Positions 935-43,592 of a stretch of 43,592 bases of DNA are shown here, piece after piece (position 1 is the first letter of the stretch; every line of letters starts with the position of its first letter). The position numbers were made by a program, and so were the translations under genes. The notes below the pieces were generated by a model. That model was not told where the DNA came from, ran no database searches, and saw only the letters and a program-made list of their open reading frames with translations. Source of the stretch: Sphyrna mokarran (taxonomy: Eukaryota); the NCBI GenBank assembly GCA_024679065.1, contig JAGIQG010000287.1:1-43592 (forward strand), written 5' to 3'.

Positions 935-1451
935 ATTTGTGTGTGTGAGCCAGTGGGTGTGTTTGTCAGTCTGAGTTTTGTATGTGTGTTTCTGTGTGTG
1001 TGTGTGTGTGTGCACGCACATGCGAGTATGTGTGAATATGTGTCTGTGTGCTCAGGTGCTTGTGTTTAAGCTTTTTTATGTTTGTCGATGTGTGCGTGAG
1101 TGAGCGTATAAAGGTTCTGGTATGTATGTGTGTGTTTTGTGTGTGTGTGTCTGGGTGCCCGTGTGTGTGTATGTGTTTGTGCATGTGTGTGCGTGTGNNN
1201 NNNNNNNNNNNNNNNNNNNNNNNNNNNNNNNNNNNNNNNNNNNNNNNNNNNNNNNNNNNNNNNNNNNNNNNNNNNNNNNNNNNNNNNNNNNNNNNNNNNN
1301 NNNNNNNNNNNNNNNNNNNNNNNNNNNNNNNNNNNNNNNCACGCATGTACATGTAGTGTCAATATGTATCTGTGTGCTCAAGTGCATGTGTTTTAGCTTT
1401 TTTATGTCTGTCTTGTGTGCGTGAGTGAGCCTGCAAGGGTGCTGGTATGTA
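935..1451. repeat. Compound (TG)n-rich low-complexity repeat with a recurring ~80-bp unit; continues at 2736-2935
   Basis: gtgtgctca.gtgc.tgtgttt.agcttttt...gtgtgcgtgag.gagc recurs at about 1046, 1372 and 2821. Confidence 0.85.
1198..1339. other. Assembly gap (142 N)
   Basis: Run of n inside TG-rich repeat. Confidence 1.
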
Positions 1452-32240: not shown

Positions 32241-32285
32241 TTAGAGTTTTGGATCCTCGTTAAAGGCCAGGCGAGCATAAAGTGT
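32241..32285 (-). CDS. IgSF receptor terminal coding exon with ITIM/ITSM-like motif
   Basis: Acceptor cctttttttcatccacAG; phase 0 matches the preceding donor; reads TLYARLAFNEDPKL*. Confidence 0.75.
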   Translation of the reverse strand, partial: TLYARLAFNEDPKL

Positions 32286-32859
32286 CTGTGGATGAAAAAA
32301 AGGTCTGTTAATACAATCCATACCATTGAGTTCCCCACCTCCTTCCCTCTTCCCCGCCACCACTCTACTCAATGGGTTTATGGTTGACGAGTAGCTCAAC
32401 TCACACACACACATACATTGAATAATCCTTAATCCATTCACTAACATAAATCTATCCGTCTCACTTTGGAGAGTCCCAAAGGTATAATGGCTCTGTATAG
32501 CTTTTTAGTGACCAGAAAGCCGACCCTCATTGTGTGGAGAAACGTTTTGATTTGATTTGGTTTATTCTTGCCTCATATATATTAGTATGTATTGAAAAGT
32601 ACTGCTTCTTGTCCAATAGTGACAAAGAGTGTCGTGTATGGAACAGGAATGGCGAGGGTGCAGATTATAATATTATAGTGATAGCTCACGTGTAGAGAAA
32701 GATCATCTTAATATGAGGCAGGTCAACTCTGACGGTAGCAGGGAAGAAGCTGTTCTTGGGTCGATTGGCACGTGACCTTAGACTGATGTATTTTTTTACC
32801 CCGAAGGAAGGAGGTGGAAAAGAGATGCGTGGGGTCCTTGATTATACTGGCTGTTTTCA

Positions 32860-33580
32860 CATATTACGATCACAGCTGATCGTCCAGCCCAAAAGCCTAA
32901 TCCTGACTTCTCCCCATTACCTTCGCCCCCAAGTGTATGTCTAGCCACTTCTCAAATACATTCAATTTTTTGGCGTCAACTACATCCTGTGGTAATGAAT
33001 CTCATAGGTTCACCACGTTTTGGATGATGAAATGTCTAGTCACCTTTGTTCTGGATGGTCTACCTAAAATCTCAGACTGTGGCTCCTCGTTCCGGACTCC
33101 CCCTAGCATCAGCAACATCCTCCCTGCATCTGCCATGTCTAGTCGTGTTAGAATTTCATAAGCCTGTGAAATCCCCTCATTTGTCTGGACTCCACTGAAA
33201 ACAATCCTGACCTAGTCAACCTCTCGTTATACATCAGTCCCGCCATTCCCGGAATGAGCCTGATAAATCTTCAATGCATTTCCTCCAGAGCAAGGACGTT
33301 CTTCCAAATTCAATACGCTTGGTATGTTTCCTGCTCTACCCAAATCCACAATAACTGGTCCTGTCCCATCACCCAATCTGTGATTGCTGTTTCTGGACTG
33401 CCCCAGCATCGGGAACATCCTTCCTGCTTCTAACCTATCTAGTCCTGTTAGAATTTTATGTCTGTGAAATCCCTCTCATTTGTCTGAACACGAGCGAAAA
33501 CAATGATAACCTCTTCAATCTCTCGTCAAACATCAGTCCTTCTATTCCCGAAATCAGTCTGGTAAACCATCGTTACACTC
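32860..33580 (-). mobile_element. Degenerate CR1 3' fragments with internal duplication
   Basis: Two related blocks at about 33085-33300 and 33385-33580. Confidence 0.7.
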
Positions 33581-33581
33581 C

Positions 33582-34362
33582 AGAACATAGAACATAGAAC
33601 ATAGAACATAGAACAATACAGCACACAACAGGCCCTTCGGCCTTCGATGTTGTGCCGACCAAAATAAAAAGCAATGCCCCTCCAAACTAAACCATTCCCT
33701 TCTCTTCCATATACTTATCAATTAACCTCTTAAACGCCACCAAACTTGGCGCATCTACAACAGCTGCAGGCAGGGCATTCCACTCCCTAATCACTCTATG
33801 AGTAAAGAACCTACCTCTGATATCCGTCCTATAACTCATACCCCTTAATTTAAAGCTGTGTCCCCTCGTGCTAGCATTCTCCATCCTAGGAAAAAGGCTA
33901 TCACTGAAAAGGATAAAACTGTCCACCCTATCTAAACCTCTCATCATCTTATATGTTTCAATAAGGTCTCCTCTTATCCGCCTCCTTTATAACGAAAACA
34001 ACCTCAAATCCCTCAGCCTCTCCTCATAAGACCTGCCCTCCATACCAGGCAACATCCTGGTAAACCTCCTCTGTACCCTCTCCAATGCCTCCACATCATT
34101 CTTATAATGTGGGGACCAGAACTGCACACAATACTCCAAGTGCGGCCGCACTAGAGTTTTGTACAGTTGCAACATGACGTTGCGGCTCCGAAATTCAATC
34201 CCCCTACCATAAAAGCTAAGACTCCGTATGCCTTCTTAACAACCTTATCGACTTGACTGCCTACTTTCAGGGATCTATGCACAAATACACCAAGATCCCT
34301 CTGTTCATCAACACTATTAAAAATCCTACCATTAGCCCTATACTCTACACATTTATTATTCT
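33582..34362 (-). mobile_element. CR1 subfamily A in the last intron of the receptor
   Basis: LVRPHLEYC..RFFTHRV; (ATAGAAC)n tail. Confidence 0.95.
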
Positions 34363-35141
34363 TGCTCTCTCAATGTTCTTGCTCTTTCAAGAGCAAGAAC
34401 ATTTTTCCATAGTGAATAAGCTTGATATGTTTCCTGCTCTGACCAAGACTGCAAGAACTACAAAGGATCATGAATGAGTCATGTCCTGTCATTCAAACCA
34501 GCCTCCCATCCAATGAATCTTTCGACACTTCCTCTTCCCCCGGCAAAGCAGTCAGCATAATTAAGGACCCCAGGCATTCCGGACGTTCCCTCTTTCACCT
34601 ACTTCCGTCGGGAAAAAGAAACAAAGGTCTGAGGTCACGTACCAACTGGCGTAAGGACAGCTTCTTCTCTGCTTCCATCAGACTTTTGAATGGACCTCGC
34701 TGTAAGTTGATCTTTCCCTACACCCTATCCATGACGATAACACTACATTCTCCACACGCTCCTTTCCTGCTCTATGAACGATATGCCTTCTCTGTATAGA
34801 GCGCAAGAAACAATTGTATTCCAATAAATTTGACAATATTAAATCAACTCTATGAATGGTATGCTTTTTCTGTATCACGCGCAAAAACAATACTTTTCAC
34901 GTATGCTAATATATGTGACAGTAATAAATCAACCCAAATCAAATGACCCACGAATAAATTGAACAAAAATATAACTTTGAAGAGGTGTCATTCGGCCTGG
35001 AGACTTTAATCTATCCGTCATGCCGCCAGGCTTGTTGAGAATTTCCAGAATTTTCTGTGTTGGTTGCGAATTCTAAATCGCGGATTAATAATTAATGAAA
35101 AATATCCGTGTGTTTTAGTAACAATAATTCTATTCATTCAC

Positions 35142-35200
35142 CTCTTTATCCTGTTTGTGTTCTCTGGATTCTGTCAGTTCCTCATCACTGTTCGCGGTTC
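35142..35200 (-). CDS. IgSF receptor cytoplasmic exon 1
   Basis: 138-nt intron after the TM exon; acceptor ctctatttctaacAG; donor GAG|GTGAAT; 59 nt; phase 1 to 0; open as (G)TANSDEELTESREHKQDKE. Confidence 0.78.
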
Positions 35201-35338
35201 CTGTTAGAAATAGAGATTGAAATGAAATTTAAAATGGCTACATTTCACACCGAACCCGTTCAGAGGTGTCAATAACTCAGTGATAAATGAGTGGATTGAG
35301 AGCGCCGTGGAGTAACAGCGTTTCCCAGCAATCATTAC

Positions 35339-35458
35339 CTCTCTGGCGGTTCCTGCAGATCATACTTCCGGCCACAAGGATCAATCCCAGAAGCAGAAAC
35401 GCCGCGGCCGACAAACCCCCGGAAAACATTAAATTACAGATGGATGAGGACGGAGAAT
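35339..35458 (-). CDS. IgSF receptor exon: short Cys-containing stalk and transmembrane helix
   Basis: Acceptor gtgtttttgcAG; donor G|GTAATG; phase 1/1; 120 nt. DSPSSSICNLMFSGGLSAAAFLLLGLILVAGSMICRNRQR has a hydrophobic span with no charged residue followed by a basic stop-transfer sequence. Confidence 0.85.
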
Positions 35459-35793
35459 CTGCAAAAACACTCACTCAACGGAAGTGAGGAAATAATTAAA
35501 CAAACGAAGGATTTTGTCCAATCTAACTTTACTGGAACATGGCAAAACGCTTTTTTTTGCACACGTTCCCATCACGCAATAGAGTAGCACTTGTGCAACA
35601 GAACACAAGGCGAGGTAGAGAGAGATAGTGGTAGAGAGACTGAGCACTTTTTTCGAACAGGACACACAGGGAGATGAAGTGAGAGAATGACAGAATCAGT
35701 TAGAGAGTAACTGCAGAATCCCATACCGCAGAAAAAGACCATTCGGGTCCTCGCGTCTACGCTTACAGCGATCCTACTCCATCCCTGTTACCT

Positions 35794-38090
35794 CATGAGC
35801 CAGACCAGGTGTTAGGCTTGGAAGTTGGTGAACATTTTGGTGATAGTGACCACAATTCGGTTACGTTCGCCTTAGTGATGGATAGGGATAGGCAGGAAGC
35901 TGGGGGCAGTAGTTATAGCTGGGGGAATGGTAATTATGAGGCCATAAGGAGAGAATTAGGGTGCATAGGTCGGACTAGGAAACTACAGGGACTGGGAACA
36001 TCTGAAATGTGGAGCTTATTCAAGGAATAGCTGCTGCGAGTCCTTGATAAGTATGTCCCTGTCAGGCAAGGAGGAAATGGTCGAGTAAGGGAACCGTGGT
36101 GTACTAGAAAAGTTAATTTGCTGGTTAAAAGGCAAAAGGAGGCTTATGTCAGGATGAGGATTGAAGGCTCAGTTAGTGCAATGGATAGCTATAGATTAGC
36201 CAGGAGGGAGCTAAAGAGTGACTTGAGGAGAGCTAAGAGGGGACACGAGAAGACTTTAGCTGATAGGATTAAGGAGAATCCTAAAGCTTCATTCAGATAT
36301 GTTAAGAATGGACGATTGGTTAGGGCAAGATTAGGGCCAGTCATAGACAGCAGTAGGAAGTTGTGCGTGGAGCCTGAAGAGATTGGAGAGGCACTGAACA
36401 AATATTTCTCTTCGGCATTCACGCAGGGAGATGTAAATGTAGTTGTGGAGAACACTGAGGTACAGGGTTGCAAACTGGAAAGTATTGAAGTAGATAGGGA
36501 GGATGTGCTAGATATTCTTGACGGTTTGAAATTAGATAAGTCCCCTGGGCCGGACGGGATTTACCCTAGGATTCTCTGGGAGGCAAGAGAGGCGATTGCA
36601 GAGCCTCTGGCTCTGATCTTCAGGTCGTCATTGGTTACGGGTATAGTTCCGGAGGACTGGAGGATAGCGAATGTGGTCCCATTGTTCAAGAAGGGGAAGA
36701 GAGACCTTCCAGGGAATTATAGGCCAGTGAGTCTTACTTCTGTTGTGGGCAAAGTATTGGAGAGAATTATCAGGGATAGGATTTATAGTTATTTAGAGAG
36801 AAATGAATTGATTGGGGATAGTCAGCATGGTTTTGTGAAGGGTAGGTCGTGCCTTACTAACCTTATTGAGTTTTTTGAAAAAGTGACCAAAGAGGTGGAT
36901 GGGGGTAAGGCAGTTGATGTGGTATATAAGGACTTTAGTAAGGCGTTCGATAAGGTGGCCCATGGGAGGCTTCTGCAGAAAATGCAGATGTATGGGATTG
37001 AGGGTGATTTAGCTTATTGGATTAGGAATTGGCTAGCAGATAGAAGACGGAGGGTCGTGGTTTAAGGGAGATATTCATCGTGGAGTTCGGTTACAAGTGG
37101 TGTACCTGAGGGGTCTGTTTTGGGGCCCCTGCTGTTTGTAATTTTTATAAATGATCTGGATGAGGGTATTGAAGGATGGATTAGTAAATTTGCGGATGAC
37201 ACTAAAGTCGGTGGAGTGGTAGATAGTGAAGAGGGGTGTTATAGTTTGCAGAGAGACTTGGACAAGTTGCAGAGCTGGGCCGAGAGGTGGCAAATGGAGT
37301 TTAATGTGGAAAAGTGTGAGGTAATTCACTTTGGCAGGAATAACAAATGTGTAGAGTATAGGGCTAATGGTAGGACTCTCAATAGTGTTGATGAACAGAG
37401 GGATCTTGGTGTATATGTTCATAGATCCCTGAAAGTAGGCAATCAAGTCGATAATGTTGTTAAGAAGGCATTCGGAATCTTAGCTTTTATTGGTAGGGGG
37501 ATTGAATTTCGGAGCCACAACGTCATGTTGCAACTGTACAAAACTCTAGTGCGGCCGCACTTGGAGTATGGTGTGCAGTTCTGGTCCCCACATTATAAGA
37601 ATGATGTAGAGGCATTGGAGATAATACAGAGGAGGTTTACCAGGATGTTGCCTGGTATGGAGGGCAGGTCTTATGAGGAGAGGCTGAGGGATTTGAGGTT
37701 CTTTTCGTTAGAAAGAAGGCGGCTAAGAGAAGACCTTATCGAAACATATAAGATGATGAGAGGTTTATATAGGGTGGACAGTGATAGCCTTTTTCCTAGG
37801 ATGGAGAAAGCTAGCACGAGGGGACATAGCTTTAAATTAAGGGGTGATAGTTATAGGACGGATATCAGAGGTAGGTTCTTTACCCAGAGGGAGGTTAGGG
37901 AGTGGAATGCCCTGCCTGTGGCAGTTGTAGATGCGCCAAGTTTGGTGGCGTTTAAGAGTTTAGTTGATAAGTTTATGGAAGAGAAGGGAATGGTTTAGTT
38001 TGGTGGGTCATTGCTTTTTTCATAATTGGTCGGCGCAACATCGAAGGCCGAAGGGCCTGTTCTGCGCTGTAATGTTCTATGTTCTATGTT
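35794..38090 (+). mobile_element. Longest CR1 subfamily A copy (end of APE endonuclease plus RT), two stops, antisense in the receptor C1-TM intron
   Basis: GDSDHN endonuclease motif, KSPGPDG, NYRPVSLTS, QHGF, FADD; stops ending at 36030 and 37065. Confidence 0.96.
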
Positions 38091-38092
38091 CA

Positions 38093-38338
38093 TGTATTTA
38101 CCCTCGTAATCCCCCTGGCACTCCGCTCAATTTAACAGGGCCAATCAACCAAACCTGCACATCTTTGGACTGTGGGAGAAAACCGAAGCACCCGGTGGAA
38201 ACCAACGCAGAGACGGGGAGAATGTACAGACTCCATACAGACAACCCCACTGCCCCCTCCCCCCCCCACCCTCCACGAGGCTGGAATTGAACCCAGGTCT
38301 CTTGTCGCTGTGCGAACAATTGTGCCACCATATTGCCC
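38093..38338 (-). mobile_element. HE1-type SINE
   Basis: tRNA-like head and aacctgcacatctttggactgtgggag core. Confidence 0.75.
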
Positions 38339-39467
38339 AATCGAGAGATTTGAAAAAAAAAATAGGACACAGGGAGATACAAAGATAATGACAGAGGGAC
38401 TGAACATGTTTTGAACGAGGCCCACATAGGGAAAGGTGTAGAGTGTAGAACATTCAGGGAGGAGAAAGAACCAAAATTTTACAGAGCCCAGTTTAAACGA
38501 CAAAGAAATAAAGTACGAAGTAGATTCATAGGGTTGCAGAGTCTCACAGGATGGAAAAAATCACTTCCGACCAACTTGTCTATCCCGCCCCCATTTTAAC
38601 CACTAAGCTAGTCTCATTTGCCCGTGTTTGTCCCATATCCCTCTGTACTGATCTTACCTATGCGACTGACTGATCTCCTTTTAAAAGACAAAATTGTACC
38701 GACCTCTGTTACTACTTCTGCCAGCTTGTTCCAGATACTCAACACACTGTGTGTGAAAAAAATGCTCCAGGTATATGGACAGAATTAATGATTCAAAAAT
38801 AGTCGGAGGTCACGTACCAACTGACTCAAACACTGCTTCTTCACTGCTACCTTCAGACTTTTGAATGCCAGCCGCACCCCCCCGCCCCAAATTCCCTACT
38901 ATTACGTTGATCTTTCTCTATACACTAACTATGGCTGTGACACCACATTCTGCACTTTCCTTTCCTTCCATTTGTACGATATATTTCCCTTCCATAGCCG
39001 CAAGAAAATCTTCTTTCCAATGTGTACTAATACATTTGACAGTAAATGAAATCAGATCCAATCTAATTCAATCGAGACATGTCCAGCAAAAAACTGCGCA
39101 TTAGCGCTTAGTTTATGTTCTCCCAATCTTAGATGGAGAGATGGACAGAATAGATAGAACAGATGACTTCTCCAAAAGTATTTAGCTCGATTTCCATTGG
39201 GGAAACATAGAGATTTTGAGGACGAGCAAAAAGGAGAGAATAAAATAGATATTCTTGGAGAGCGACAGGTGGGCACTTAGTTCAAGCACCATATTACTAG
39301 CACAACAATTGCAAATATAGAACACTGGGGAATACTAAATAAGCCAATAAATAAACGGGGAGAAGGAGAGAGAGAGGCAGAGAGTGAGAGAGAGAGAGAG
39401 ATGTGAAGTAGAACGGGAGTGAAAGCGATGCAAACAGTGTCCCAGGACAGACTGATGGAGACAGTTA

Positions 39468-39740
39468 CAATGTGGAGATGCCAGCATTAGACTGAGATAA
39501 ACATAGTAAGAAGTCTCACAACACCAGTTTAAAGTCTAACCAATTTATTTGATAGTAAACCCATAAGGTTTCGGGGTTTGCCCCTCCATCAGACAAAAGA
39601 AGAGTTCTGGCCTCAGACAGAGCATATATCTGAGGCCAGAATTCTCCATAAGCCTGGCCAAGGGGCAAACCCCGAAACCTTGTGAGTTTATTATCAAATA
39701 CATTGGTCGGACTTGAACCTGGTGTTGTGAGACATCTTAT
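39468..39740. mobile_element. Penelope-like fold-back element (arms about 110 bp) with a hammerhead-like motif in each arm
   Basis: 39507-39617 is an imperfect reverse complement of 39629-39739; GGGGCAAACCCCGAAA is present on each strand. Confidence 0.75.
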
Positions 39741-39949
39741 TGAGAAAGTTACACCAGGGAAAAGCTTGAGTATTGACAGAGAGAAAGTGGGGGAGGGAGG
39801 TGTGCGGGTGGGTTGGGGTGGCGGGGAGTCGGTGGTAAACAGGAGAAAATAAACAACAAAAGAAGGCCTATCAATCTATCGAGCCTGCAAGAAAATAATC
39901 CCACGCAGGTCCCAACCACTTAATCCCAAATATTTACCATGACACCAGA

Positions 39950-40370
39950 CAATTTAGCATGGCCAATCCACCTGATTTACTAATCTTTGGACACTCAGGA
40001 ACAATTTAGCACGGCCAATCCACCTAACCTGCACATCTTTGGACACTAAGGGGCAATTTAGCATGGCCAATCCACCAGCCTGCACACTTTTGGACACTAA
40101 GAAGCAAGTTAGCATGGCCAATCCACCAGCCTGCACACTTTTGGACACTAAGAAGCAAGTTAGCATGGCTAATACAGCTAACCTTCGGATCCATGACACT
40201 TGGATTCAATTAACCTTGGCTAGTCCAGATGACCTACATATTCCTTAACATTAAGGGGCGATTTAAAGCAGCCAATCCATCCAATCTGCACATCTTTGGA
40301 CACTGAGGAATAATTTAGCACGGTCAATCCACCTAACCCGTACATCTTTGGAGATTGAGAGGAAACAGAA
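39950..40370 (-). repeat. Tandem array of a 51-52-bp SINE-core unit, about 8 copies
   Basis: caatttagcatggccaatccacctaacctgcacatctttggacactaagggg at about 39950, 40002, 40054, 40105, 40156, 40259, 40311. Confidence 0.9.
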
Positions 40371-40551
40371 ACATCCACAGGACATCCAGCGTAACTGAAT
40401 GGGATTGAAGTAGAGAGAGAGATGAAGGAATGAGTGAATGGTTCAACGCCGTGCTGTGACAGAGTGTGACACATTTCAATTTTACACACTTTCAGATTGG
40501 TCCCTAACTTTCAGACGGTGTCTTAGCCAGATATAAAAAGTGGGAGAGGAG

Positions 40552-40914
40552 AAGAACATAGAACATAGAACATAGAACATTACAGCACAGAACAGGCCCT
40601 TCGGCCTTCGATGTTGCGCCGACCAATATAAAAAGCAATGCCCCTCCAAACTAAACCATTCCTTCTCTTCCATATACTTATCAACTAACCTCTTAAACGC
40701 CACCAAACTTGGCGCATCTACAACCGCTGCAGGCAGGGCATTCCACTCCCGAACCACCCTTTGGGTAAAGAACCTGCCTCTGATATCCGGCCTATAACTA
40801 TCACCCCTTAATTTAAAGCTGTTTCCCCTCGTGCTAGCTTTTTCCATCCTAGGAAAAAGGCTATCACTGTCCACCCTATCTAAACCTCTAATCATCTTAT
40901 ATGTTTCGATCAGG
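40552..40914 (-). mobile_element. CR1 subfamily A 3' fragment
   Basis: [10 protein letters not shown].. plus tail. Confidence 0.95.
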
Positions 40915-41310
40915 TAAAGAAGAGGTGATTCGGTTTAACTTGTTTACTCTGCCATCTAATAACACCATGGCTAAGCATGTACATGAACCTCACTTCCCCC
41001 GGCCTCTTTCCCTTAGCGTTTAATCTATCCGTTCTAAAAAAAAAACTGTTTCTGTGTTTGAATATTCACTGTTTTCTATAGAAGATATAAAATATCAGAA
41101 AACGAAACTGGGAGGACAATGATAGGGTAGTGATGATTTCTATCTCCATGGAGATGCCCGCGGAGACATTTGCAAGAAAATACTCCCACCCACGTCCCAA
41201 TCACTTAATCCCAAAAATTTACAGTGACACTAAGAGATAATCTACAATGGCCCCTTGGTAAGTTGCCCCCCTTAATATGAAATGGATTGAAAAATGGTCA
41301 GTGTGAATAC

Positions 41311-41616
41311 CTCTCTGAGATGAGACACTTTCACTGAGAACACTTTCACTGAAGTTGACTTGAATGGCGCAAGTACAGTGAGCGCCGCTTCTCCAAGTTT
41401 CTGCCGAGACGCTGATGTAACTCCTGACGGTGTAGGTCCCGTCCGGCTCCAGTGTCCCCGAATCGGTCTGTCCCTCGGTATCTCTCCCTGAAACATTCCA
41501 GCTGATGGGAAAGGGATCGGGAGACACACCTCTGATCAAACACAACAATGGGACGCTTTTCATATCGGGAATCTCATCCAGCGGCGGGGTGAGGAGGAAT
41601 ATGGTGGGAGAACCCG
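41311..41616 (-). CDS. IgSF receptor exon: C1-set constant domain
   Basis: Acceptor ...tttAG after a 100-nt intron; donor G|GTATTC; phase 1/1; 306 nt. PTIFLLTP, LLCLIRGVSP, Trp at Cys+14 (ISWNVSG), DGTYTVRSYISV, TW..G..CTC follow the Ig/TCR/MHC C1-set pattern. Confidence 0.92.
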
Positions 41617-41716
41617 CTAAATCCAGTGAATGAAACAGAACACCCGTTAACTGGTGGAACAAGACACTTTATTATCTTTGAGAAACCCACTGAAAGAGAA
41701 TAATAATGGAATTTAC

Positions 41717-42055
41717 CCATAATCACTAACTTGGAGCCATTGCCGAATATTTGGGCCATTTTCGGGTAATTGGAGATTGCACAGTAATACACCCCAGAAT
41801 CATTTATCCGGGAATCCGCAATGGTAAGTGTATAAATACGCCCATTTTCAGAAATCTCGCTTGAATATCTCTCCACAACTGGACTGTTCTGGAACGCTGT
41901 ATAGATGGCATCGATGTTGTTTCTTCCCCTCTGTCTGTACCAGAAGACAGAGCCAGCAGCTTGCTCCTGGATGTGGCAGCGGAGATTAACAGAACACCCG
42001 GCAGGGAGCGTCTGAACCGGCGGAGACTGGGACACGGTTACTTGAGACACTGTAA
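41717..42055 (-). CDS. IgSF receptor exon: germline-joined V-J domain (non-rearranging)
   Basis: Acceptor ttttatctctctttctctttcccAG (alternative in-phase AG 6 nt downstream, exon start 42049); donor G|GTAAAT; phase 1/1; 339 nt. Translation has VSQSP, first Cys (LRC), WYRQ, YTLTI, DSGVYYC, an 11-aa CDR3-like loop and the J motif FGNGSKLVI in one exon. No RSS seen at the V-J junction. Confidence 0.93.
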
Positions 42056-42252
42056 CTGGGAAAGAGAAAGAGAGATAAAACAACAGTCACCTCAGATTAT
42101 GGACCATTCCTTGAAGATAGCGGACTGAAAGCCAATTGGGAGTAAACTTCAAACCAGCCTTCCATTCAATGACACATCCCGCTGCCTCGGGGAAAAGCAA
42201 CTAGCATGATCAAGGGTCCCCATGCACCCTGGGCATTCTCTCTTCCACCATT

Positions 42253-42335
42253 ATGGACTTTAGTAAGGCGTTTGATAAGGTGGCCCATGGAAGACTTCTG
42301 CAGAAAATGCAGATGTATGGGATAGAAGGTGATTT
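42253..42335 (+). mobile_element. Short CR1 RT fragment in inverted orientation abutting a LINE tail
   Basis: [27 protein letters not shown]; near reverse complement of about 43423-43505. Confidence 0.9.
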
Positions 42336-43592
42336 AGAACATAGAACATAGAACATAGAACAATACAGCACAGAACAGGCCCTTCGGCCTTCGATGTTGT
42401 GCCGACCAAAATAAAAAAGCAATGCCCCTCCAAACTAAACCATTCCCTTCTCTTCCATATACTTATCAACTAACCTCTTAAACGCACCAAACTTGGCGCA
42501 TCTACAACAGCTGCAGGCAGGGCATTCCACTCCCTAATCACTCTTTGAGTAAAGAACCTACCTCTGATATCCGTCCTATAACTCATACCCATTAATTTAA
42601 AGCTGTGTCCCCTCGTGCTAGCTTTCTCCATCCTAGGAAAAAGGCTATCACTGTCCACCCTATCTAAACCTCTAATCATCTTATATGTTTCGATTAGGTC
42701 CCCTCTTAGCCGCTCCTTTCTAACGAAAACAATCTCAAATCCCTCAGCCTCTCTTCATAAGACCTGCCCTCCATACCAGGCAACATCCTGGTAAACCTCC
42801 TCTGGACCCTCTCCAATGCCTCCACATCTTTCTTATAATGTGGGGACCAGAACTGCACACAATACTCCAAGTGCGGCCGCACTAGAGTTTTGTACAGCTG
42901 CAACATGATGCTGCGGCTCCGAAATTCAATCCCCCTACCCATAAAAGCTAAGACTCCATAAGCCTTCTTAACAACTTTATCCACTTGACTGCCTACTTTC
43001 AGGGATCTATTGACACATACACCAAGATCCTTCTGTTCCTCAACACTATTAAGAGCACTACCATTAGCCCTATACTCTACACATTTATTGTTCCTGCCAA
43101 AGTGCATTACCTCACACTTTTCCACATTAAACTCCATTTGCCACCTCTCGGCCCAGCTCTGCAACTTGTCCAAGTCACTCTGTAAACTAAAACACCCCTC
43201 TTCACTATATACCACACCACCAACTTTAGTATCATCTGCAAATTTACTGATCCATCCCTCAATACCCTCATCCAGATCATTTCTAAAAATTACAAACAGC
43301 AGGGGCCCCAAAACAGACCCCTGAGGCACACCACTCGTCACCGAACTCCACGATGAATATCTCCCATCAACCACCACCCTCTGTCTTCTATCTGCCAGCC
43401 AATTCCTAATCCAATTAGCTAAATCACACTCTATTCCACACATCTGCATTTTCTGTAGAAGTCTTCCATGGGCCACCTTATCAAAAGCCTTACTAAAGTC
43501 CATATATACTACATCAACCGCCTTACCCCCATCCACCTCTCTGGTCACTTTCTCAAAAAACTCAATGAGGTAGTAAGGCATGACCTACCCTT
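42336..43592 (-). mobile_element. CR1 subfamily A in the presumed leader-V intron, runs off the window
   Basis: ORF 42706-43581 with RT motifs; tail at 42336. Confidence 0.95.

What the first reader, a model, noticed from the sequence alone, without database searches (positions are those of the whole stretch)
32241..42055. Non-rearranging TCR/Ig-chain-like receptor (germline VJ + C1 + TM + tyrosine-motif tail) in a cartilaginous fish
Seen: five exons with GT-AG boundaries and compatible phases (1/1, 1/1, 1/1, 1/0, 0/stop) join into about 289 aa after the leader with no stop or frameshift. V and J (FGNGSKLVI) are in one exon with no RSS, the V-C intron is only 100 nt, and the second domain is C1-set. 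Known: C1 domains are largely confined to Ig, TCR, MHC, B2M, tapasin and SIRP. TCR chains have V-J-C1-TM with charged TM residues and very short tails. Germline-joined shark IgL chains have no TM. NKp30 is VJ only, and NITR and lamprey TCR-like receptors pair V with I- or C2-type domains. Inference: this gene has the ectodomain layout expected of a pre-RAG antigen receptor but signals through its own tail. It may be related to the non-rearranging VJ-C1 genes (PRARP/VJC1 type) or be an undescribed chondrichthyan family. Automated pipelines would probably mislabel it as Ig light chain-like.
Basis: partly seen in the sequence, partly recalled or inferred. Interest (0 to 1): 0.92.

Follow-up and report, generated by a model that had tools for sequence, protein, structure and literature searches.

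The report
Non-rearranging shark VJ-C1 receptor gene
This is a real shark gene for a membrane receptor that looks like one chain of a T-cell receptor or antibody but is ready-made in the germline, and it belongs to a large, unnamed gene family of sharks, rays and bony fishes that bears on what antigen receptors looked like before gene rearrangement arose.

Summary
On the minus strand, five exons with canonical AG/GT borders and matching phases give 289 codons. They are a single-exon VJ domain ending FGNGSKLVIM with no RSS, a 100-nt intron, one C1-set domain, a Cys-linker plus uncharged TM, and a tail with TLYARL.

All four junctions are backed by homology. The closest protein is Mustelus asterias LOC144510334 (V 70%, C1 78%, TM 72%). 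It carries the same residues at the split codons and an almost identical tail. In coded public runs, contigs cover only the exons. They skip the 100-nt intron and run from the C1 donor (41311) into the TM exon start.

The gene belongs to a clustered multigene family. I saw 45 proteins from 16 named elasmobranch species, auto-named "Ig kappa/lambda light chain-like", "Ig heavy chain Mem5-like", "TCR beta-like" or "uncharacterized". Teleosts have distant counterparts with the same plan.

It is not UrIg, UrIg2, TCR or IgL. By recalled architecture it is of the PRARP kind, which I could not test. Ten literature searches found no description.

No leader exon lies in the window, and transcription of this particular copy is not shown. 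Inhibitory signalling is inferred. The scan's unchecked notes report similar VJ-C1 genes on other pieces of this genome.

The parts
41717..42055 (-). V(J) exon (phase 1/1): the last leader residues, then a V domain with FR4/J fused in the germline
   Evidence: Translation. Pfam V-set 2.3e-14. 70% identical to P0156. Fold model pLDDT 92.3, nearest TCR V-alpha/V-beta, Ig V-kappa and VNAR. No RSS. Loose ends of related contigs sit exactly at 42056.
41718..41747 (-). J-like G strand FGNGSKLVIM. FGNGS is (near-)invariant in the family and is also an N-x-S sequon
   Evidence: F118, G119, N120 and S122 are invariant and G121 is at least 90% conserved across 12 members. G-N-G-S is invariant across shark, ray and salmonid rows.
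41617..41716 (-). 100-nt V-C intron (GT..AG)
   Evidence: Zero contig depth across 41640-41711. A joint removes a net 100 nt in 1, 1 and 2 contigs of runs X2, X3 and X4.
41311..41616 (-). C1-set constant-domain exon (phase 1/1)
   Evidence: Translation. Pfam C1-set 8.4e-10. 78% identical to P0156 and 81% to P0158. Model pLDDT 89.4. Nearest structures are IgNAR C2/C3, IgM C-mu4 and IgG CH3/CH2 at Z 13-14, with UrIg2 at Z 12.8.
35459..41310 (-). 5,852-nt intron filled with LINE reverse-transcriptase fragments, a 51-52-nt tandem array and a 111-nt inverted repeat. It holds no further Ig exon
   Evidence: tblastn of the exons. Pfam on 9 minus-strand ORFs here found 0 Ig families. RVT_1 hits. Repeats.
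35339..35458 (-). Exon for the connecting peptide with Cys, the TM helix and the stop-transfer CRNRQR (phase 1/1)
   Evidence: Translation. 72% identical to P0156. The loose end of an X4 contig at the C1 donor matches 35429-35458 with 3 mismatches, and 0 of 100 shuffles give a match.
35436..35438 (-). Membrane-proximal Cys codon, the candidate interchain disulfide
   Evidence: Invariant column C237 in A1 and A2. Present before the TM in 35 of 36 family proteins that have a TM.
35358..35420 (-). Predicted TM helix GGLSAAAFLLLGLILVAGSMI, with no charged residue
   Evidence: Only 2 of 36 family proteins have D/E/K/R in my 12-aa TM core window, and both are at its edge.
35142..35200 (-). Cytoplasmic exon 4 (phase 1/0), acidic stretch TANSDEELTESREHKQDKE
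   Evidence: The P0156 tail reads TANRDEELTESREHKQNTE at the same place.
32241..32285 (-). Cytoplasmic exon 5 with TLYARLAFNEDPKL and the TAA stop
   Evidence: Identical 14 residues end P0156.
32268..32285 (-). Tyrosine motif T-L-Y-A-R-L (ITIM/ITSM-like)
   Evidence: Y, A and L are invariant columns in A1 and A2. [ST]xYAxL occurs in 31 of 36, and YAxL in 33 of 36, family tails.
42056..43592 (-). Upstream 1.5 kb holding LINE fragments only. The leader exon is not here

Best explanation
The stretch holds exons 2-6 of a germline-joined, non-rearranging antigen-receptor-like gene. The exons are VJ, C1, connecting peptide plus TM, and two tail exons. The gene is one member of a clustered multigene family of elasmobranchs.

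Shown here:
- The product, after a leader encoded off-window, has one TCR/Ig-type V domain with a built-in J strand and one C1-set domain.
- It has a conserved membrane-proximal cysteine and an uncharged TM helix.
- It has a tail of about 39 aa with one conserved (S/T)xYAxL motif.
- Variation among relatives is concentrated in the CDR-equivalent loops.

Inferred:
- It is a type I surface receptor that forms disulfide-linked dimers through the membrane-proximal Cys.
- It binds ligand with germline-diversified CDR loops.
- After tyrosine phosphorylation of the ITIM/ITSM-like motif it recruits SH2 phosphatases or adaptors. It therefore signals through its own tail, most likely as an inhibitor, rather than through CD3- or DAP12-type partners.
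For: Gene structure.

Domain types.

Junctions: the split-codon residues Ala (V|C1), Asp (C1|TM) and Gly (TM|E4) are the residues found at those positions in P0156. The P0156 tail matches exons 4-5 almost residue for residue.

Spliced contigs of relatives or paralogues: coverage is confined to the exons. The intron is skipped in 1, 1 and 2 contigs of X2, X3 and X4. The loose end at 41311 in X4 is the TM exon start (1 match with 3 mismatches, 0 of 100 shuffles). The loose ends at 42056 read, by eye, as a family-type leader (..GFCALFHVFQ).

Family: 13 of 13 hits and the first 35 of 45 hits are elasmobranch proteins of the same plan. One 309-aa skate member is also encoded on a 1,540-nt Logan contig, which is therefore a spliced transcript.

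Trees: the window's C1 falls in a 98/95 clade with three Mustelus paralogues. The window's V is sister to P0156 at 98/87.

Conserved signalling and assembly features: Cys before the TM in 35 of 36, [ST]xYAxL in 31 of 36, charged TM core in 2 of 36.

Variability: CDR1/2/3 at 1.76/1.31/1.29 bits, against frameworks at 0.47-1.06 and C1 at 0.72 (17 rows mixing orthologues and paralogues).
Against: - No leader exon lies in the window's last 1.5 kb, which is LINE-filled, so this copy may be 5'-truncated.
- No run on record as RNA holds the stretch.
- At every listed variable place, all X2-X4 contigs differ from the window. Transcription of this very copy is therefore not shown.
- The one near-identical contig (X1, 2 differences) runs 45 nt into the intron, so it looks like DNA or unspliced RNA.
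- The V exon has an extra Cys in FR1 (AGCSV) where relatives have Ser.
- The motif has Thr at -2 and Leu at +3. That is neither the textbook ITIM ([IVLS]xYxx[LVI]) nor the textbook ITSM (TxYxx[VI]), both recalled. It could equally be a YxxPhi sorting signal.
- Dimerisation, ligand and signalling are untested.
Confidence: 0.75

Rival explanations
1. This particular copy is a dead or 5'-truncated member (a pseudogene) of the family. It would be kept open by chance or by recent decay, and cut off from its leader and promoter by LINE insertions.
For: No leader exon in 42056-43592, which is LINE-derived. No RNA holder on record. All variable places in the expressed contigs differ from the window. 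There is an extra FR1 Cys and Met instead of Thr at the end of J. The family is multigene, so dead copies are expected.
Against: All five exons are open, with eight canonical splice sites. All family-invariant residues are present. The end branches in the trees are ordinary: 0.13 for C1 and 0.28 for V. A leader more than 1.5 kb upstream is plausible in this TE-rich genome.
Confidence: 0.2
2. The family is not a pre-RAG relic. It would be a secondary derivative, in which a rearranging IgL- or TCR-type cluster was joined in the germline (as happens in sharks) in an early jawed vertebrate and then gained TM and tail exons.
For: Shark IgL-lambda is entirely germline-joined (PMC12227049, Discussion). 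The V exon's closest solved relatives are ordinary Ig-kappa and TCR-alpha V domains. A Pristis member's accession (XP_051901910) is numerically next to the IgL sigma-2 accession cited in that paper's Methods, which is a weak hint of linkage.
Against: Teleost counterparts share the J-strand GNGS, the Cys and the YAxL tail, so the layout predates the split of cartilaginous and bony fishes. The V-C intron is 100 nt. The best single-domain sequence match of the C1 exon is UrIg2's second C domain (38.2 bits, against 28-29 bits for the best domains of the two Ig entries shown). No footprint of an RSS remains.
Confidence: 0.35
3. The tail tyrosine motif is an endocytosis or sorting signal (YxxPhi) or an ITSM-like switch that can activate, rather than an inhibitory ITIM.
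For: Thr or Ser at -2 and Leu at +3 fit several motif classes, and there is only one tyrosine in the tail.
Against: The conservation extends beyond YxxL, to Ala at +1 and Ser/Thr at -2. The TM is uncharged and there is no ITAM spacing. Teleost counterparts have V-Q-Y-A-T-L, which fits the ITIM consensus.
Confidence: 0.2
4. It is a bona fide TCR or Ig light-chain gene that happens to be germline-joined.
For: Relatives carry automatic names such as 'Ig kappa/lambda light chain-like' and 'M1-specific TCR beta chain-like'.
Against: A TM exon and a tyrosine tail are spliced to C1, which excludes IgL. There is no charged TM residue, the tail is about 39 aa and there is no RSS, which excludes TCR. 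The family forms its own clade, with a large score gap to everything else (171 to 103 bits).
Confidence: 0.02

Closest known systems
Unnamed elasmobranch RefSeq models, e.g. Mustelus asterias LOC144510334 (P0156), LOC144510901 (P0011) and 'Ig heavy chain Mem5-like' (P0158)
   Same: Same exon-by-exon plan. V is 70%, C1 78-81% and TM 72% identical, with the same junction residues and the same tail ...TLYARLAFNEDPKL.
   Different: A different species or paralogue (not identical). The window copy lacks a visible leader and has an extra FR1 Cys.
UrIg2 (PDB 9dmx; Flajnik et al., Sci Adv 2025, PMC12227049; read: outline, Introduction, Results sections 6-7, Discussion)
   Same: A non-rearranging single-exon VJ followed by C1-type domains and a TM, found in elasmobranchs. 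UrIg2's second C domain is the best single-domain sequence match of the window's C1 (38.2 bits). Structurally it is close (Z 12.8).
   Different: UrIg2 has 9-11 C domains, or hinge exons in batoids. It has an IgM-like TM and no described tyrosine-motif tail. It appears as one gene per species in the AgR complex. Here there is one C1, an ITIM-like tail and a multigene family.
UrIg (Flajnik et al., J Immunol 2023; not held, known to me only through PMC12227049 and PMC10751288)
   Same: A non-rearranging VJ plus C1-type domains, in elasmobranchs.
   Different: UrIg is secreted and has three C domains. It is liver-expressed, MHC-linked and has a conserved V. Here the protein is membrane-anchored and has one C1.
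PRARP (Fu et al., J Immunol 2019; paper not held, features recalled; only citations seen)
   Same: As recalled, a non-rearranging VJ + C1 + TM + cytoplasmic tail in chicken and other non-mammalian vertebrates. The citing papers list it among joined-VJ IgSF genes.
   Different: Orthology is untested. No PRARP sequence or text was available, and no hit carried that name.
Teleost V-C1-TM proteins (e.g. Salvelinus P0184/P0186, Esox P0197, Misgurnus P0202)
   Same: The same plan and shared invariant residues: DSGxYYC, GNGS in the J strand, PLxCL, the membrane-proximal Cys and YAxL in the tail.
   Different: Only 22-28% identical. They have a longer hinge and tail, the J strand lacks the Phe of FGxG, and they form a separate clade.
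TCR chains
   Same: The V-J-C1-connecting Cys-TM order. The V fold is closest to TCR V-alpha/V-beta and Ig V-kappa.
   Different: No RSS or rearrangement, no basic TM residues, and a long tail with its own tyrosine motif.
Germline-joined shark IgL-lambda
   Same: V and J are joined in the germline and there is a single C1 domain.
   Different: IgL has no TM or tail. Here the TM and tail exons are conserved and are seen spliced.
NITR, SIRP and NKp30 (features recalled)
   Same: Non-rearranging V domains with a J-like strand. NITR and SIRP-alpha carry ITIMs.
   Different: NITR pairs V with an I-type domain. SIRP has two C1 domains. NKp30 has V only with a charged TM. Here there is V + one C1 + an uncharged TM.

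Membership tests
Elasmobranch VJ-C1-TM-YAxL family (unnamed RefSeq LOC models) | Single-exon V domain ending in the J strand FGNGS-L | tested here: met
   F, G, N and S are invariant columns and the second G is at least 90% conserved in A1.
Elasmobranch VJ-C1-TM-YAxL family (unnamed RefSeq LOC models) | Exactly one C1-set domain | tested here: met
   No further Ig exon in the introns.
Elasmobranch VJ-C1-TM-YAxL family (unnamed RefSeq LOC models) | Membrane-proximal Cys, an uncharged TM and a tail with (S/T)xYAxL | tested here: met
Elasmobranch VJ-C1-TM-YAxL family (unnamed RefSeq LOC models) | Both domains nest inside the family in trees | tested here: met
   The C1 clade has 98/95 support. 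V is sister to P0156 at 98/87.
Elasmobranch VJ-C1-TM-YAxL family (unnamed RefSeq LOC models) | Split leader exon upstream of V | tested here: inconclusive
   Not in the window. Related contigs carry a leader-like loose end exactly at 42056.
UrIg / UrIg2 | Non-rearranging VJ encoded by one exon | tested here: met
UrIg / UrIg2 | Three (UrIg) or nine to eleven (UrIg2) C1-type domains | tested here: not met
   One C1 exon only.
UrIg / UrIg2 | V and C domains cluster with UrIg/UrIg2 in trees | not testable with these tools
   No UrIg or UrIg2 sequence could be stored. I have only a PDB sequence match and structure ranks, where subclasses are tied.
T-cell receptor chain | Separate V and J segments flanked by RSS | tested here: not met
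T-cell receptor chain | Charged TM residues for CD3 assembly and a very short tail | tested here: not met
Ig light chain (including germline-joined shark lambda) | Secreted V-C chain without a TM | tested here: not met
   The TM and tail exons are conserved and are spliced to C1.
PRARP | VJ + C1 + TM + cytoplasmic tail, non-rearranging (recalled definition) | tested here: met
   The architecture is met. The definition itself is recalled, because the paper is not held.
PRARP | Orthology or sequence clustering with chicken PRARP genes, and MHC linkage | not testable with these tools
   No PRARP sequence was available. No tetrapod hit appeared.
NITR | V domain followed by an I-type domain | tested here: not met
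   The second domain is C1-set.
SIRP | V followed by two C1 domains | tested here: not met
   One C1 only.

The most novel reading that the evidence does not exclude
This family of sharks, rays and teleosts could be a surviving lineage of the two-domain, membrane-bound VJ + C1 gene that Flajnik et al. (2025, Fig. 2 legend) place at the root of UrIg, UrIg2, Ig and TCR. The family's single C1 best matches UrIg2's second C domain, which is the domain that model treats as ancestral. If so, these genes are closer in layout to the receptor invaded by the RAG transposon than UrIg or UrIg2 are. They would show that the ancestor was a germline-diversified, dimeric receptor that signalled through its own tail and was probably inhibitory. 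The invariant N-x-S sequon inside the J bulge (FGNGS) may mean that its V domains do not pair in the VH/VL manner.
Probability: 0.22. Interest if true: 0.85.

Novelty: new member of a known kind. Interest (0 to 1): 0.58.

Why it matters
Non-rearranging genes with a built-in VJ domain and a C1 domain are the main living clues to what was split by the RAG transposon. In the papers I could read, elasmobranchs are credited with two such genes, UrIg and UrIg2.

This finding points to a further family. It is larger, clustered, membrane-anchored and has a single C1 and a conserved tyrosine motif. It is present in 16 named elasmobranch species and has teleost counterparts. It sits in databases under misleading light-chain, heavy-chain and TCR names.

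If it branches basal to the rearranging classes, it gives a testable model of the ancestral receptor's layout and signalling. If it does not, it is still an unstudied candidate family of inhibitory immune receptors in sharks, and a source of systematic misannotation of Ig/TCR gene counts.

Tried and rejected
Leader exon. I ran tblastn of nine family leaders and a regex scan over 42056-43592. I also searched for the leader-like loose end. Nothing was found, and the region is LINE-derived.

RSS. No heptamer or nonamer, strict or loose, lies in 41600-42100.

Extra Ig exons. tblastn of all five exon peptides against the whole window found only the exons themselves. Pfam on 10 minus-strand ORFs of the two long introns gave 0 families. 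ORFs of 75 aa or more in 1-32000 are LINE fragments or repeats, and I saw no Ig there.

RNA of this species. The look-up of sequencing runs gave 5 weak holders with shares of 0.07-0.11, none on record as RNA. Read laying showed spliced contigs of relatives or paralogues but not of this exact copy.

Synteny with the MHC or the AgR complex. The only evidence is indirect. In nine species, family members lie on a contig of one and the same length, which suggests one cluster.

PRARP and UrIg membership. The PRARP paper, the UrIg 2023 paper and Ohta 2019 are not held. No such sequences could be stored, so no joint tree was built.

Subclass of the C1 domain by structure. Foldseek and VIA-align rank Ig CH domains, IgNAR C, UrIg2, TCR C-beta and MHC-II within about 2 Z of each other. 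That does not discriminate between them.

Profile against PDB. The list is dominated by multi-domain antibody chains, so it is uninformative for ranking.

ESM Atlas. It returned only generic V-set + C1-set clusters.

Labels. The labels 'NITR-like' and 'TCR-like' on outgroup rows are my guesses from architecture. Their source names are only automatic.

Supplements. The supplements of PMC12227049 (table S1, fig. S1) and of PMC10751288 were not opened, because supplements are closed. They may list such genes in the AgR complex or MHC maps.

Rows left out of the trees. One search omitted isoforms and duplicates (P0034, P0151, P0154). It omitted members without a C1 hit (P0062, P0182). It also omitted teleost rows P0183, P0185, P0189-P0192, P0195, P0201, P0203, P0204, P0207 and P0209-P0211. 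additionally omitted P0094 (too short) and several V-truncated or duplicate rows (P0007-type rows were kept).

Full report
OBSERVATION. The gene lies on the minus strand. I read the region and translated each proposed exon on its own.
- V(J) exon, 42055..41717: TVSQVTVSQSPP...DSGVYYCAISNYPKMAQIFGNGSKLVIM.
- C1 exon, 41616..41311: GSPTIFLLTPP...LLCLIRG...WNVSG...CTCAIQ...SSQR.
- TM exon, 35458..35339: SPSSSICNLMFSGGLSAAAFLLLGLILVAGSMICRNRQR.
- Exon 4, 35200..35142: TANSDEELTESREHKQDKE.
- Exon 5, 32285..32241: TLYARLAFNEDPKL, then stop.

Every acceptor is a pyrimidine tract plus AG and every donor is GT(A/G)A. The phases are 1/1, 1/1, 1/1, 1/0 and 0/stop. The V-C intron is exactly 100 nt. The exon lengths sum to 289 codons. 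No RSS heptamer or nonamer occurs in or beside the V exon. Pfam calls the first exon V-set (2.3e-14) and the second C1-set (8.4e-10, with C2-set_2 only at 0.052). All work was exon by exon, or used natural database proteins.

IS THE FIVE-EXON MODEL REAL? Two independent lines say yes.

The first is homology. A search of 1.84 billion representative proteins with the V exon alone gave 1,266 hits at E<=0.001, of which the best 150 were listed. Among the single-V hits were shark and ray proteins at 33-60% identity. These proteins run leader, VJ (FGNGSKL), one C1, Cys, TM, and a tail ending xxYAxLxF.... The closest relative I found is Mustelus asterias LOC144510334 (P0156, 303 aa). It matches the V exon at 70%, the C1 exon at 78% and the TM exon at 72%. 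Its tail reads ...RGTANRDEELTESREHKQNTETLYARLAFNEDPKL. The residues that the window's split codons predict are Ala at V|C1, Asp at C1|TM and Gly at TM|exon 4. These are exactly the residues at those positions in P0156.

The second line is reads. No run on record as RNA holds the V-C1 stretch. Five coded runs hold 7-11% of its sampled words. I laid four of them on 41100-42150. Runs X2, X3 and X4 (organism B) placed 3, 3 and 25 contigs, mostly 85-95% alike. Depth is confined to the two exons. It is zero across 41640-41711, below 41244 and above 42071. A joint from 41618 to 41720 with one letter between removes a net 100 nt, in 1, 1 and 2 contigs. Loose ends sit exactly at 41311 and 42056, the predicted C1 donor and V acceptor.

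The X4 loose end at 41311 matches the first 30 bases of the TM exon (35429-35458). It has 3 mismatches, it is the only match in the window, and 0 of 100 shuffles give one. The loose ends at 42056 read by eye, on the gene strand, as ..GFCALFHVFQ followed by a G that completes G|TT. That is a family-type leader joined in phase 1. This sequence is not in the window. So leader to V, V to C1 and C1 to TM splicing at the predicted sites is seen in transcripts of a close relative or of paralogues.

There are limits. The runs' 'RNA' label is a guess. At every listed variable place, all covering contigs differ from the window, even though 2 of 25 X4 contigs are 99% alike or more. Transcription of this very copy is therefore not shown. 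The single X1 contig (210 nt, 2 differences) runs 45 nt into the intron, so it is DNA-like. A second loose end at 41311 in X2 and X3 is a different sequence, absent from the window. It may be a paralogue or an alternative exon.

WHAT IS NOT THERE. No leader exon lies in the 1.5 kb upstream. That stretch is made of LINE reverse-transcriptase fragments. No further Ig exon hides in the introns. The 5.85-kb C1-TM intron holds LINE fragments, a 51-52-nt tandem array and a 111-nt inverted repeat. The rest of the window (1-32000) shows only LINE fragments and repeats among ORFs of 75 aa or more.

THE FAMILY. Exact look-ups named the hits. They include:
- 'immunoglobulin lambda-1 light chain-like' in Cetorhinus;
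- 'immunoglobulin kappa light chain-like' in Carcharodon and Leucoraja;
- 'uncharacterized protein' in Mustelus, Chiloscyllium, Pristis, Mobula and Stegostoma.

Searching with P0011 (its VJ-to-tail part) gave 13 proteins at E<=1e-5, all elasmobranch. A 12-member family profile (A1) gave 45 proteins at E<=0.001. The first 35 are elasmobranch proteins from 14 species. The scores then drop from 171 to 103 bits, and the remaining 10 are teleost. With Leucoraja and Mobula birostris, that makes 16 named species.

The automatic names also include 'Ig heavy chain Mem5-like', 'immunoglobulin gamma-1 heavy chain-like', 'M1-specific T cell receptor beta chain-like' and 'lachesin-like'.

In nine species, all members seen lie on a contig of one and the same length. 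Examples are six Cetorhinus proteins on a 7,994,003-bp contig and at least ten Heterodontus proteins on a 22,062,530-bp scaffold. Two models of 524 and 548 aa look like fusions of neighbouring genes. Both facts suggest tandem clusters. A 309-aa skate member is also encoded on a 1,540-nt Logan contig, which must be a spliced transcript.

I examined 45 family proteins:
- 43 have a C1 hit.
- 36 have a TM after C1.
- 35 of those 36 have a Cys before the TM.
- 31 of 36 have [ST]xYAxL in the tail, and 33 of 36 have YAxL.
- Only 2 of 36 have D/E/K/R in my crude 12-aa TM core, both at its edge.

TREES. I cut domains with HMMs built from A1. In the C1 tree (55 rows), the window's C1 sits in a clade of four with the three Mustelus paralogues (98/95). 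It is 81% identical to P0158. In the V tree (52 rows), it is sister to P0156 (98/87), inside the same Mustelus clade. Both trees show at least two old subfamilies. The window's subfamily holds Heterodontus, Mustelus, Scyliorhinus, Cetorhinus and Carcharodon. The second holds batoids plus Cetorhinus, Mustelus, Scyliorhinus and orectolobiforms. A batoid pair (Pristis, Hypanus) stands apart. Because several shark species have members in both subfamilies, the split is old.

Among 17 sequences of the window's subfamily, which mix orthologues and paralogues, column entropy is highest in the CDR1-, CDR2- and CDR3-equivalent loops (1.76, 1.31 and 1.29 bits). Frameworks are at 0.47-1.06 and C1 is at 0.72.

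BEYOND CARTILAGINOUS FISH. The next hits are teleost proteins of about 330 aa with V-set plus C1-set. Aligned with shark and ray members (A2), they share several invariant features. These are DSGxYYC, G-N-G-S in the J strand, PLxCL, the C1 Trp, the membrane-proximal Cys, and Y-A-x-L in the tail (VQYATL, an ITIM-type motif). A mixed profile found 25 bony-fish proteins. They come from salmonids, Esox, Dallia, Umbra, Misgurnus, Carassius, Conger and Aldrovandia, with a weak Lepisosteus hit. No tetrapod appeared and no hit was named PRARP. That search scores only the 8,000 candidates sharing most words, so absence means little.

WHAT THE DOMAINS RESEMBLE. By sequence against PDB, the V exon is nearest to Ig V-kappa and TCR V-alpha domains. 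For the C1 exon, the top three entries were shown in detail. The best single-domain score among them is the second C domain of shark UrIg2 (9dmx) at 38.2 bits. The best domains of the two Ig entries score 28-29 bits.

Each exon was folded alone with a family alignment, giving pLDDT 92.3 for V and 89.4 for C1. The V model is nearest to TCR V-alpha/V-beta, V-kappa and VNAR. The C1 model is nearest to IgNAR C2/C3, IgM C-mu4 and IgG CH3/CH2. By VIA-align, Ig CH domains score Z 13-14, UrIg2 12.8, TCR C-beta 12.3-12.6 and MHC-II about 12. This confirms a C1-set fold but does not separate the subclasses.

LITERATURE. Of Flajnik et al. 2025 (PMC12227049) I read the outline, the Introduction, Results sections 6-7 and the whole Discussion. 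Of Verissimo et al. 2023 (PMC10751288) I read passages. Of PMC11599192 I read one passage.

These papers credit elasmobranchs with two non-rearranging AgR genes. UrIg has VJ plus 3 C domains, is secreted and is MHC-linked. UrIg2 has VJ plus 9-11 C domains plus a TM and lies in the AgR complex. The Fig. 2 legend of the 2025 paper predicts an ancestral two-domain VJ + C1 gene whose C domain resembles UrIg/UrIg2's second C domain. PRARP is only cited, as a joined-VJ gene. Its paper is not held, so what I say of its architecture is recalled.

Ten searches found no paper describing a membrane-anchored, single-C1, tyrosine-tail VJ family in cartilaginous fish. They were:
- UrIg;
- nonrearranging + antigen receptor + C1 domain + cartilaginous fish;
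- PRARP;
- 'antigen receptor precursor';
- VJC1;
- PRARP + antigen receptor;
- nonrearranging + ITIM + shark (0 papers);
- non-rearranging / ITIM / shark / elasmobranch / C1-set / VJ domain;
- six phrasings from 2023 on;
- VJ-C1 phrasings.

Subscription journals and all supplements lie outside that check.

HOW IT MOST LIKELY WORKS.

Shown: the gene's layout, the domain types, the conserved Cys, the uncharged TM, the conserved (S/T)xYAxL, the variability focused on the CDR-equivalent loops, and the splicing in related transcripts.

Inferred from established knowledge of TCR/BCR chains and ITIM receptors: it is a type I surface protein. It forms disulfide-linked homo- or heterodimers through the membrane-proximal Cys. 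It recognises ligand through germline-diversified loops. It signals through its own phosphorylated tyrosine motif by recruiting SH2 phosphatases or adaptors, most likely as an inhibitor. With no charged TM residue, it cannot dock ITAM adaptors. The motif has Thr at -2 and Leu at +3, so ITSM-like or sorting roles remain open. The invariant N-x-S sequon inside the J bulge (FGNGS) would, if used, sit where Ig and TCR V domains pair. That hints at unconventional V pairing, but this is speculation.

VERDICT. The finding is a genuine member of a real family of non-rearranging VJ-C1-TM receptors. The family is unnamed and apparently undescribed, and it is mis-annotated in public proteomes. The kind itself is known through UrIg, UrIg2 and PRARP, and the family's proteins are already in RefSeq. 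I therefore rate it a new member of a known kind, with moderate-to-high specialist interest. The interest would rise if proper phylogeny and synteny place it near the root of the antigen receptors.

The scan's own first-stage notes are unchecked. They report similar VJ-C1 genes and clusters on other pieces of this genome, and the same tail on this stretch. I treat them as leads only.

Noticed in passing
window 36118-37998 (+), 42706-43581 (-), and many places in 1-32000: Numerous fragments of one LINE family, with RVT_1 reverse-transcriptase ORFs of up to 315 aa. Their 3' ends carry (AGAACAT)n tails, for example at 33582-33615, 40553-40580 and 42335-42362. These fragments fill the introns and the region upstream of the V exon.
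   Followed up: partly
window 39507-39739: A 111-nt inverted repeat, 83% complementary, with 11 nt between the arms. It lies inside the C1-TM intron and is hairpin- or MITE-like.
   Followed up: partly
window 39949-40352: A tandem array of about 7.5 copies of a 51-52-nt unit (...GGCCAATCCACC...CTTTGGACAC...) in the same intron. Similar units recur at 38120-38180 and elsewhere, so it is probably SINE-derived.
   Followed up: partly
window 41311 (loose ends of runs X2 and X3): A second sequence follows the C1 donor in two runs. It differs from the TM exon and is absent from the window. It may be a paralogue's linker exon, an alternative (secreted?) exon or intron read-through.
   Followed up: partly
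Family proteins P0034, P0176, P0154, P0062, P0182, P0158: Some RefSeq isoforms or models skip the TM exon but keep the tail (P0034, P0176). Some lack C1 and run V-TM-tail (P0062, P0182). One ends soon after the TM without the tyrosine motif (P0158). These may be alternative splicing or model errors.
   Followed up: no
Family alignments A1 and A2 (J strand; window 41733-41741): The J strand's G-N-G-S is invariant from sharks to salmonids and forms an N-x-S glycosylation sequon at the beta-bulge that mediates V-V pairing in Ig and TCR. NDS (before YYC) and WNVS (in C1) are also conserved sequons.
   Followed up: no
Proteins P0050 and P0215-P0221 (Scyliorhinus torazame, one 426-Mb chromosome): A different catshark family surfaced in the V search. 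It has two or three tandem VJ-type V domains (FGKGT, SGDGS and WNGT J strands), a TM and a 3-aa tail. It too is auto-named 'Ig kappa light chain-like'.
   Followed up: no
Protein P0093 (Pristis pectinata XP_051901910): Its accession is numerically adjacent to XP_051901911, which PMC12227049's Methods list as Pristis IgL sigma-2. This is a weak hint that the family lies beside an IgL sigma-2 cluster.
   Followed up: no
window 1198-1339: A run of 142 N, flanked by CA/TG-rich simple sequence.
   Followed up: no
Protein P0070 (UniParc UPI0003D7C55C, no organism given): A 185-aa fragment with a family-type VJ (MVFGSGSKIVI) and the first half of a family-type C1 (64 bits over 58 positions). It sits on a long branch. 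It could be a holocephalan member, but its source could not be seen.
   Followed up: partly
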